Source: Diplonema japonicum (Eukaryota > Protista > Euglenozoa: Diplonemea). Taken from it: a stretch of DNA of 64,000 nucleotides. Under the pieces are notes generated by a model that saw only the letters and a program-made list of their open reading frames with translations, ran no database searches and was not told where the DNA came from. Positions 26,489-27,215 of the stretch are shown piece after piece (position 1 is the stretch's first letter; each line of letters opens with the position of its first letter). A program made the translations under genes and the position numbers. The stretch spans positions 372,001 to 436,000 of the forward strand of contig OZ025712.1 of the NCBI GenBank assembly GCA_964019335.1. The letters run 5' to 3'.

Positions 26489-27215
26489 GAAGGCGTGTCG
26501 GGGAGGGTGCTGGAGCGAAGTCGGCCTGTTTGGCACAAGCCGCTATCGGGGCACCGGTAGCGGGGGTGTAAGACCACTCAGACTCGGTCTGAGCAAAAGG
26601 CATTCTCTCCCATCGCGCGGCGTGTGCGTGGTTGCGTGCGGCGGTGACACCCACCGTTCCTGTTCATTCCACCAGCGTCGAGAGGCTGAGACCGATCTCG
26701 CGCACAGTGGAGGCCACAGGTTGTTCCCGGCGCCCTTGTAGCGTTGTCAGTCCTGCCCCAACTGAAAGGCCAGTCAGGACACAGGCTAACTGGGTACAGG
26801 TACTCGGACAACGGTGGGGTGAACAGGAGCGGTGGGTTGTGGCTGGTGTCGCTGGTGAGTGGCGTACGGTATGTTTGTGCTGGTTCCGCTGTGTCGTGGT
26901 GTGATGCGTGCGGCGGCGTCGCCCAGTGTTCCAGCGTACCCCATCCGAGAGACGTGAGGCTGAGACCGGTCTCGCGCGAAGTGGAGGCCACAGTGTTGAT
27001 CCCGGCGCCCTTCAGGCAATGACCGCCCTGTCGCAACTGGAAGGCCAGACAGATCGGTAGCCGAACTGGGTACAGACAAACGGATCGACGGTGGGGTGCA
27101 CGGGGACACTGGAAGAGAACTGGTTGCGGTGGAGGTGCTCTAGTCTGTCTGTGTGGCGTGTGCTGCTGGGTGCGAGGCGTGCTGTGCCGGGCCGGCAAGA
27201 AGTAGAAGTAGATTT
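26371..27215 (+). mobile_element. ~850-nt ribozyme-headed structured non-coding element (non-autonomous retroelement or lncRNA)
   Basis: 5' ribozyme, long G·U-rich stems, two homologous internal modules, 3' (AGAAGT)2 tail and a flanking AAACTT direct repeat. Confidence 0.55.

What the first reader, a model, noticed from the sequence alone, without database searches (positions are those of the whole stretch)
26640..27120. Two copies of an unrecognised ~125-nt pseudoknotted RNA module with covarying stems
Seen: 26682-26809 and 26956-27075 share AGGCTGAGACCGRTCTCGCGC..AGTGGAGGCCACAG..TCCCGGCGCCCTT..CAACTGRAAGGCCAG..CNAACTGGGTACAG. Each copy sits on a long closing stem of different sequence. Inner stems are also rewritten while keeping pairing (GTCCTG/CAGGAC versus ACCG..CTGT/ACAG..CGGT). 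Both keep the GAGA/TCTC and GTGG/CCAC hairpins, a CCCGG/CTGGG stem, a possible CCUU-AAGG loop-loop contact, and a C(U/G)AA joiner like HDV J4/2, but I find no P1. Inference: structure is under selection here, and the module could be a new ribozyme, aptamer or protein-binding element. I recognise no known family.
Basis: partly seen in the sequence, partly recalled or inferred. Interest (0 to 1): 0.85.

Follow-up and report, generated by a model that had tools for sequence, protein, structure and literature searches.

The report
Duplicated structured RNA inside a retroposon
The two look-alike RNA folds are real and appear to be kept by selection, but they are the duplicated middle part of a 1.3-kb jumping element (a ribozyme-headed, LINE-dependent retroposon of a diplonemid protist), so this is a new retroposon RNA domain of unknown function, not a free-standing RNA gene.

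Summary
Window 26651-26835 (A) and 26923-27112 (B) are paralogous units of about 190 nt. Five sequence blocks are 95% identical between them; the rest is 63% identical. Each unit has a 23-position closing stem, a second stem and a long arm that differ in sequence but still pair. Of 14 changed pairs, 12 are kept (chance about 5; P about 5e-5). G-U pairs outnumber A-C 12 to 1, so the + strand RNA is the folded strand.

Both units lie inside a 1,336-bp dispersed element (26371-27706) with 8 full and at least 11 partial copies at 93-100% identity. It has target-site duplications and an HDV-like ribozyme fold starting at its first base. Its 3' tail is shared with a 6.2-kb LINE that encodes endonuclease, reverse transcriptase and RNase H. 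It usually sits 13-20 nt upstream of tRNA genes.

My model of the fold finds only these 29 units in the genome. Rfam, tRNA, 7SL and rDNA comparisons are negative. The pseudoknot, the GAGA/UCUC hairpin and the CCCGG/CUGGG stem are untestable or disfavoured, and HDV membership fails.

Function is inferred: a cis-acting, probably protein-binding domain of the retroposon RNA.

Earlier scan notes already describe this genome's tRNA-targeting LINEs and ribozyme-headed SINEs. One unchecked note (s1-860130) may be the same motif elsewhere.

The parts
26363..26370 (.). Left target-site duplication (GCAAACTT); the right copy is at 27707-27714
   Evidence: Read directly. Other copies have their own A-rich duplications of about 10-11 nt.
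26371..27706 (+). Whole 1,336-bp non-autonomous retroposon that contains both modules
   Evidence: Shared sharp ends in 8 full-length copies and at least 11 partial copies at 93-100% identity. No ATG-led ORF was seen on the + strand. The antisense ORF has no relatives.
26371..26493 (+). Candidate HDV-like self-cleaving ribozyme at the exact 5' end. P1 is G26371-U26450 plus 26372-26377/26444-26449. P2 is 26422-26430/26484-26493. L3 (UCCUCGU) is 26434-26440. P4 is 26454-26478. J4/2 (GCGAA) is 26479-26483. J1/2 carries a 44-nt insert.
   Evidence: Pairs listed. The Rfam drz-agam-1 match is only 15.2 bits, E = 6.3. Inferred, not shown to cleave.
26494..26621 (+). Spacer between the ribozyme and unit A; dispensable
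   Evidence: A contig of organism C (run X4) joins 26491 to 26622, skipping 130 nt, and keeps the ribozyme and both modules.
26651..26835 (+). Module A. Closing stem S0 is 26651-26673/26813-26835. The four-way junction holds a hairpin region 26679-26702, hairpin H2 26707-26717 and stem S3 26720-26726/26806-26812. The long arm is 26739-26788, with a conserved loop at 26759-26774.
   Evidence: pairing probabilities 0.89-1.0 for S0, H2, S3 and the arm.
26923..27112 (+). Module B, the paralogue of A. S0 is 26923-26945/27090-27112. H2 is 26981-26991. S3 is 26995-27001/27083-27089. The arm is 27015-27062.
27113..27227 (+). G/U-rich spacer ending in a T-run (27223-27228)
   Evidence: Read. The weak similarity to the spacer after unit A shows that the duplicated unit is about 274 nt.
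27228..27706 (+). 3' tail homologous to the 3' UTR of the autonomous LINE; ends in (ATT)n
   Evidence: About 75% identity to the LINE at L027:9425-9911, with long identical blocks.
27720..27792 (+). tRNA-Asn gene, 13 nt downstream of the element (the insertion target)
   Evidence: Four other copies lie 16-20 nt upstream of same-strand tRNA-Gly, Ala, Leu and Met genes.

Best explanation
The two modules are an old tandem duplication (period about 274 nt) of one ~190-nt structured RNA domain. The domain lies in the body of a 1,336-nt non-autonomous retroposon of a diplonemid, probably Diplonema japonicum.

Shown:
- The element is dispersed and has target-site duplications.
- It begins with a sequence that can adopt a full HDV-like ribozyme fold.
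- It ends with the 3' UTR tail of an autonomous APE/RT/RNase H LINE.
- Each module is a long closing stem capped by a four-way junction: two small hairpins plus a stem that continues into a long arm.
- The helices differ between A and B but still pair, while five single-stranded or junction blocks are nearly invariant.

Inferred: the element's RNA is cut free of a longer transcript by its head ribozyme and is copied into new sites by the LINE enzyme, which recognises the shared tail. The modules are cis-acting parts of that RNA, kept because source copies that lose them propagate less well. Most likely they are a protein-binding scaffold. Such a scaffold would stabilise an RNA that has no cap and no spliced leader, help export it, or bring it to the LINE proteins, much as the Alu fold does for Alu or transport elements do for retroviruses.
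For: Mobile-element context:
- Sharp shared ends and 93-100% identical copies.
- Target-site duplications.
- A LINE partner with Exo_endo_phos, RVT_1 and RNase_H domains and the same ...CATTTATTATT tail.
- A head able to form P1 (7 bp, starting with a G-U pair at the first base), P2, P3/L3, P1.1, P4 and a GCGAA joiner.

Structure under selection:
- 12 of 14 changed pairs kept, P = 5.5e-5.
- G-U 12 against A-C 1 on the + strand (binomial about 0.003, my arithmetic).
- z = -5.0 and -3.35.
- Blocks 95% identical against 63% for the rest.
- Gaps between A and B are 1-2 nt, so the region is not coding.

Retention across species:
- One contig of organism C (about 92% identity) and one of organism A (about 96%) span both modules.
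- Organism C lost the 130-nt spacer but kept both modules.
- The listed substitutions in B avoid paired positions (1 of 10, P about 0.01).
- Those in A include one double compensatory change, 26747 U>C with 26781 A>G.

Specific to this family: the covariance model finds only the 29 A and B units in 62.5 Mb.
Against: - No experiment or RNA read shows that the RNA exists, is cleaved or binds anything. All runs laid were contigs of uncertain type.
- Covariation rests on one paralogue pair plus a partial list of interspecies variants.
- In organism C, module A keeps 47 of 52 pairs. That is no better than random substitution (P = 0.16), and three pairs at the base of S0 are broken.
- The helices were derived from the same two sequences that were then tested.
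- The partner LINE's tail is only about 75% identical, so the true mobiliser is not proven.
- The proposed role (scaffold, stability, export) is by analogy only.
Confidence: 0.6

Rival explanations
1. Each module is a self-cleaving ribozyme of an undescribed class, or another RNA-processing signal. Two cuts 274 nt apart would release a unit-length RNA, as in retrozymes.
For: - Nearly invariant junction and loop blocks sit next to freely varying helices, which is what a catalytic core looks like.
- Ribozymes are common in retroposons, and this element already carries one (PMC3185411, PMC8501958, PMC4918200).
- The two copies are in direct orientation.
Against: - No Rfam ribozyme family matches, even at E <= 10.
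- The HDV topology lacks P1.
- Contigs from three organisms run straight through both modules. That says nothing about RNA, but it gives no support either.
- Genomic copies are full-length, not unit-length.
Confidence: 0.07
2. The module is a captured cellular non-coding RNA (a head derived from 7SL, tRNA, 5S, rRNA or snRNA, as in classical SINEs) that was fused to a LINE tail and duplicated, like the Alu dimer.
For: - The dimeric arrangement of a structured unit recalls Alu.
- There are short A-box-like (GCnnAGTGG) and B-box-like (GTTGnTCC) strings at 26700-26728. This is my reading and is weak.
Against: - The whole-genome search with the covariance model finds no other locus.
- The genome's own 7SL RNA is canonical (117 bits), and its alignment score with the module is within the shuffle range.
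- The rDNA unit, the LINE and the 7SL locus give only noise with filters off (best 11.8 bits).
- ARAGORN and the tRNA model do not call the modules.
Confidence: 0.07
3. The modules have no function: a duplicated GC-rich foldback whose similarity and pairing reflect shared ancestry, gene conversion or chance.
For: - Only two paralogues are available.
- The blocks were defined after looking at the alignment.
- GC-rich sequence folds easily.
- In organism C, module A shows five broken pairs.
Against: - Twelve of 14 changed pairs are kept, against 4.9 expected.
- The G-U over A-C asymmetry is not expected for decaying DNA palindromes.
- Block boundaries coincide with helix boundaries.
- Both units persist across species while the neighbouring spacer was deleted.
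Confidence: 0.12
4. The long, nearly perfect closing stems are Dicer substrates. The modules would be the source of small RNAs that silence the family, or decoys for that pathway.
For: - The stems are 23 bp.
- Diplonema papillatum encodes Dicer-like, Argonaute, Piwi and RdRP proteins (PMC10161547).
Against: - A helix alone does not explain the invariant single-stranded blocks or the four-way junction.
- An element has no interest in keeping its own silencing trigger.
- No small-RNA data are available.
Confidence: 0.05

Closest known systems
LINE/SINE pairs of the 'stringent' type that share a 3' tail (e.g. UnaL2/UnaSINE1; from general knowledge)
   Same: A non-coding element carries the partner LINE's 3' UTR tail and terminal short repeat. 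It has target-site duplications and young, nearly identical copies.
   Different: The head is not a tRNA, 7SL or 5S Pol III gene but an HDV-like fold. The body carries two copies of an unrecognised 190-nt domain.
HDV-like-ribozyme-headed retroposons: L1Tc/NARTc of Trypanosoma cruzi and R2 (PMC3185411, PMC4035085, PMC3774820)
   Same: A ribozyme fold begins at the first nucleotide of the element. This would free the RNA from a co-transcript. NARTc is likewise a non-autonomous partner.
   Different: There is no sequence relation to Pr77. J1/2 carries a 44-nt insert. The A and B modules downstream have no counterpart in those elements.
Alu (a dimer of two 7SL Alu-domain folds that bind SRP9/14; general knowledge)
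   Same: Two tandem copies of a compact structured unit in a LINE-dependent element. The likely logic, a protein-binding fold that helps the RNA reach the LINE machinery, is the same.
   Different: No similarity to this genome's 7SL RNA. The fold differs: a 23-bp closing stem plus a four-way junction.
HDV-like ribozyme fold (Rfam RF00094, RF01787 and relatives), as a model for the modules themselves
   Same: A CCGG/CUGG pairing could bracket a short hairpin and a long variable hairpin, followed by a C-N-A-A joiner.
   Different: No P1, so no cleavage site. No match to an HDV-type model. The strand that would form P1 pairs elsewhere, with covariation. Thermodynamic support for CCGG/CUGG is nil.
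Structured cis elements of retroelements that recruit host factors: MPMV CTE, IAP RTE, and the RSV direct repeats present in two copies (general knowledge)
   Same: Repeated structured RNA units with conserved loops in a retroelement RNA that lacks normal mRNA processing marks.
   Different: No sequence or motif relation. The function here is only inferred.

Membership tests
HDV-like self-cleaving ribozyme (applied to modules A and B) | P1 helix between the nucleotides just 3' of the cleavage site and the strand following P3 | tested here: not met
   Neither copy has a complementary partner. The candidate 5' strand (26720-26726 / 26995-27001) instead pairs with 26806-26812 / 27083-27089, with a U-A to A-U swap.
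HDV-like self-cleaving ribozyme (applied to modules A and B) | Match to curated covariance models of the family | tested here: not met
   cmscan of 26640-27120 at E <= 10 gave no match to any of 4,227 families.
HDV-like self-cleaving ribozyme (applied to modules A and B) | J4/2 with the catalytic C, followed by the 3' strand of P2 | tested here: inconclusive
   CUAA (A) and CGAA (B) precede CUGGG. The middle base is deleted in B of organisms A and C, and the P2-like stem has pairing probability about 0.
HDV-like self-cleaving ribozyme (applied to modules A and B) | Self-cleavage | not testable with these tools
   Needs in vitro transcription, or RNA end mapping on raw reads.
LINE-dependent non-autonomous retroposon (the element that holds the modules) | Dispersed copies with common ends and target-site duplications | tested here: met
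LINE-dependent non-autonomous retroposon (the element that holds the modules) | 3' end shared with an autonomous LINE that encodes endonuclease and reverse transcriptase | tested here: met
   L027 ORF2 has Exo_endo_phos, RVT_1 and RNase_H.
LINE-dependent non-autonomous retroposon (the element that holds the modules) | No coding capacity of its own | tested here: met
   Only GTG/TTG-led chance ORFs. The 206-aa antisense ORF has no relatives. Indels between A and B are 1-2 nt.
Classical SINE (head derived from tRNA, 7SL or 5S with an internal Pol III promoter) | Recognisable small-RNA-derived head | tested here: not met
   No tRNA, 5S or SRP match in the element. The genome's own 7SL is not similar.
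HDV-like-ribozyme-headed retroposon (the element's 5' end) | Complete HDV-like fold whose first P1 pair starts at the element's first nucleotide | tested here: inconclusive
   All helices can be drawn, with a G-U first pair at 26371. The Rfam score is 15.2 bits against a threshold of 37. Cleavage was not tested.

The most novel reading that the evidence does not exclude
The module is a new compact functional RNA fold in its own right. It could be a self-cleaving ribozyme of an undescribed class or a ligand- or protein-specific aptamer, with the five invariant blocks forming the active core. The retroposon would carry it in two copies to process or regulate its own RNA.
Probability: 0.08. Interest if true: 0.85.

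Novelty: new member of a known kind. Interest (0 to 1): 0.4.

Why it matters
Non-coding mobile elements of diplonemids have not been described. The D. papillatum genome paper postpones their analysis (PMC10161547), and the D. japonicum genome note (PMC13598402) gives no analysis of transposable elements.

This element shows that a retroposon RNA can carry, besides its head ribozyme and LINE-type tail, a sizeable internal domain that was kept in two diverged copies. That points to an unrecognised step in how a non-autonomous RNA without a cap or spliced leader survives and reaches the LINE machinery.

The domain is a clean, small target of about 190 nt with clear helices and five invariant blocks. 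It is suited to structure probing, cleavage tests and protein pull-downs.

Tried and rejected
- **Rfam.** Searched at gathering threshold and at E <= 10, on the whole window, on 26300-27500 and on the modules alone. Nothing matched the modules.
- **tRNA origin.** ARAGORN and the tRNA model are negative.
- **7SL (Alu-like) origin.** The genome's 7SL genes were found and compared. Scores lie within the shuffle range.
- **rDNA-fragment origin.** One full 6.8-kb rDNA unit gives no similarity by BLAST, or by the model with filters off.
- **Copy in the partner LINE.** None.
- **Coding.** The spurious 206-aa antisense ORF has no relatives. This also failed as a trick for fetching DNA of related species.
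- **More distant homologues.** The covariance model R1 over the whole genome returns only the 29 known units. A gapped two-block pattern scan of JGI metagenome contigs gave 18 hits, all chance by R1.
- **Variants among copies within this genome.** These are mostly single post-insertion changes and say nothing about structure.
- **Reads.** All runs were served as contigs, so RNA ends, strand and expression could not be read. The table of differences was cut (65 rows not shown), so the interspecies test is partial.

Full report
**What is there**

The stretch 26620-27140 holds two tandem units with a period of about 274 nt. Tandem Repeats Finder misses them because they are only about 75% alike.

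Five blocks are nearly identical between the copies. In A they are 26684-26704, 26706-26719, 26725-26737, 26760-26774 and 26788-26799, together 71 of 75 positions identical. The rest of the units is 63% identical (69 of 110; Fisher 2e-7, with blocks defined after looking). Gaps between the copies are 1-2 nt, so the region is not coding.

**The fold**

Folded separately, both copies give the same architecture:
- A closing stem S0 of 23 positions: A 26651-26673/26813-26835; B 26923-26945/27090-27112, with two mismatches.
- A four-way junction carrying a first hairpin region, a small hairpin H2 (GUGG-AGG-CCAC) and a 7-bp stem S3 that stacks directly on S0.
- Beyond S3, a conserved asymmetric region and a long irregular arm (A 26739-26788, B 27015-27062) whose loop carries the block CAACUGRAAGGCCAG.

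Pairing probabilities are 0.88-1.0 for S0, H2 and S3. For the arm helices they are 0.89-0.98, except for the basal arm helix of B, which is 0.29. MFE z-scores against dinucleotide shuffles are -5.0 and -3.35.

**Covariation**

I compared 43 positionally homologous pairs in S0, the two small hairpins, S3 and the putative CCGG/CUGG stem.
- 29 pairs are unchanged, 8 changed on one side and still pair, 4 changed on both sides and still pair, and 2 are broken.
- Redrawing the changed letters at random keeps 4.9 +/- 1.7 of the 14 changed pairs. Observed: 12. P = 5.5e-5.
- G-U pairs number 6 in each copy, against 0 and 1 A-C. By my arithmetic the binomial P is about 0.003. This points to RNA of the + strand rather than a DNA palindrome or the opposite strand.
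- Caveat: the helices were derived from the same two sequences.

- The GAGA/UCUC hairpin has pairing probability about 0. Both copies prefer CGAGA/UCUCG with a GG/CC extension. In organisms A and C, B carries 26955 U>A, which fits that register.
- The CCGG/CUGG stem also has probability about 0, and both strands are invariant.
- CCUU/AAGG is invariant too, so the pseudoknot cannot be tested.
- HDV membership fails. There is no P1, the would-be P1 strand is the covarying S3, no covariance model matches at E <= 10, and the joiner's middle base is deleted in B of two other organisms.

Module A matches 14 places in the genome at 99-100% identity, each followed by a B. Comparing flanks defines a 1,336-bp element, window 26371-27706, with sharp shared ends. 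There are 8 full-length copies, two of which on one contig share their upstream flank and so are probably a segmental duplication. There are at least 11 truncated or rearranged copies, all at 93-100% identity.

Copies carry target-site duplications. Here the duplicated sequence is GCAAACTT, at 26363-26370 and 27707-27714. Elsewhere they are A-rich and 10-11 nt long.

The last roughly 480 nt (27228-27706) are about 75% identical, with long identical blocks, to the 3' UTR of a 6.2-kb element at L027:~3730-9911. That element has a 406-aa ORF1 and a 1,442-aa ORF2 with Exo_endo_phos, RVT_1 and RNase_H domains. It has many 98-100% identical copies, often 5'-truncated, and the same terminal ...CATTTATTATTATT plus A-run. 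Its closest protein relative is 44% identical, from a EukProt transcriptome.

The first 123 nt of the element can be drawn as a complete HDV-like ribozyme:
- P1 of 7 bp, starting with the G-U pair G26371-U26450.
- P2, and P3 with loop UCCUCGU.
- P1.1 and P4.
- Joiner GCGAA.
- A 44-nt insert in J1/2.

Rfam gives this only 15.2 bits, so I treat it as a good candidate, not a demonstrated ribozyme. The element is therefore a ribozyme-headed, LINE-dependent, non-coding retroposon, and the two modules are its body.

**Organism**

The diplonemid-type spliced-leader 3' part, CAGTTTCTGTACTTTATTG, occurs 251 times. The assembly size of 62.5 Mb fits Diplonema japonicum YPF1604, reported as 62.30 Mb (PMC13598402). 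Earlier scan notes name the same species. I did not verify the species independently.

**Is the module found anywhere else?**

- A covariance model of the module (R1, 164 positions, 31 pairs) searched over the whole genome returns only the 14 A and 15 B units.
- With filters off it finds nothing in the partner LINE, in one complete rDNA unit or in a 7SL locus (best 11.8 bits). BLAST of the element body against the rDNA is also negative.
- The genome's 7SL RNA is canonical (117 bits to Metazoa_SRP). Its alignment score with the module lies within the shuffle range.
- A two-block pattern scan of metagenome contigs gave 18 hits, about the number I had estimated for chance, and none is real by R1.

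So the domain is specific to this retroposon family, as far as these data reach.

**Other organisms**

Public runs of at least two other coded organisms hold the element.
- A contig of organism C (about 92% identity) runs from the ribozyme through both modules. It lacks 26492-26621, so the spacer is dispensable while both modules are kept.
- A contig of organism A (about 96% identity) covers 26415-27383.

Each module is far closer to its counterpart in those organisms than to its paralogue, so the duplication predates those splits.

Of the listed substitutions (the table was cut, so this is partial):
- Those in B avoid paired positions (1 of 10; all 43 pairs kept; P about 0.01). The organism A variant folds better than the reference (P = 0.007).
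- Those in A are mixed. There is one double compensatory change (26747 U>C with 26781 A>G), five compatible single changes and five broken pairs. Three of the broken pairs are at the base of S0 and one is in H2. Overall 47 of 52 pairs are kept, P = 0.16.
- Variants among copies within this genome are mostly single post-insertion changes and are uninformative.

**How it most likely works**

Shown: the anatomy, the family, the fold's conservation and the strand.

Inferred:
- The element is transcribed within longer transcripts.
- The head ribozyme sets the 5' end at 26371.
- The LINE enzyme recognises the shared tail and copies the RNA into A-rich sites just upstream of tRNA genes.

An RNA processed this way has neither a cap nor a spliced leader. 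I therefore read the modules as cis-acting, probably protein-binding domains that stabilise or export the RNA, or deliver it to the LINE proteins. They would be maintained because only source copies that keep them continue to spread. The invariant single-stranded blocks beside freely covarying helices fit a binding platform or tertiary core. They would equally fit a catalytic core, which I cannot exclude (about 7-8%).

No data here show expression. All runs were contigs of uncertain type.

**Comparison and verdict**

In kind, this is a non-autonomous partner of a LINE with a ribozyme head. Such elements are known from NARTc/L1Tc and R2 (PMC3185411, PMC4035085, PMC3774820) and from stringent LINE/SINE pairs. 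The dimer of a structured unit recalls Alu but is unrelated to 7SL.

I found no paper describing non-coding retroposons of diplonemids. The D. papillatum paper defers them.

The module is a new RNA motif without a family, inside a known kind of element: a new member of a known kind, of moderate interest. The scan's earlier notes already cover the tRNA-targeting LINEs and the ribozyme-headed SINEs of this genome. One first-reader note on another piece, s1-860130 ('unit F carries two copies of an unknown structured RNA motif'), may be the same family. I did not check it.

Noticed in passing
window 27707-27792; L003, L006, L009, L013 (about 2548-2573 in each): Five of the eight full-length copies end 13-20 nt upstream of a same-strand tRNA gene (Asn, Gly, Ala, Leu, Met). 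The target duplication lies directly in front of the tRNA. In L003 and L013 the element landed right behind the tail of an earlier insertion at the same site. Earlier scan notes describe this tRNA-upstream targeting for the LINEs of this genome.
   Followed up: partly
L007, L010, L011, L012 (downstream of the element, locus positions below 621): Four copies have no tRNA or other Rfam-recognised RNA gene within about 600 nt downstream, so targeting is not absolute. Alternatively the target there is an A-rich tail of another repeat.
   Followed up: partly
L027 (G000:C95:360500-370499), about 3730-9911: A young 6.2-kb LINE: ORF1 of 406 aa, ORF2 of 1,442 aa with endonuclease, RT and RNase H. It has many 98-100% identical and 5'-truncated copies. 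The closest protein relative is only 44% identical. There is an internal A-run right after the ORF2 stop codon.
   Followed up: partly
G000:C17:633373-633391, C44:64557-64575, C20:670776-670794: The spliced-leader 3' part occurs 251 times across the genome. Two copies lie 12-20 nt beyond the 5' end of a LINE match (C17, C44), and a third lies just inside one (C20). This suggests LINE RNAs are trans-spliced before being copied back into DNA.
   Followed up: no
G000:C36:575433-587210: Eight tandem units, period 1,650 nt, each match only the central part (model positions 98-250) of the SRP RNA model. They lie next to a full 7SL gene at C36:573737-574040.
   Followed up: no
L027:1-3330 and many other contigs: At least four further repeat families (about 920, 457, 700 and 600 nt, 90-100% identical copies) sit upstream of this LINE copy. 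They recur next to copies of the element studied here (C61, C51, C18, C48), which looks like stacks of insertions at shared sites.
   Followed up: no
window 27694-27706 and the ends of all copies: The element and its LINE end in (ATT)n followed by an A-run. After insertion this places a TATA-like run about 15-30 nt upstream of the tRNA gene. Whether it affects tRNA transcription is unknown.
   Followed up: no
window 26378-26421: The candidate head ribozyme carries a 44-nt A-rich insert between P1 and P2. That would be long for an HDV-like ribozyme, by my recollection of the family.
   Followed up: partly
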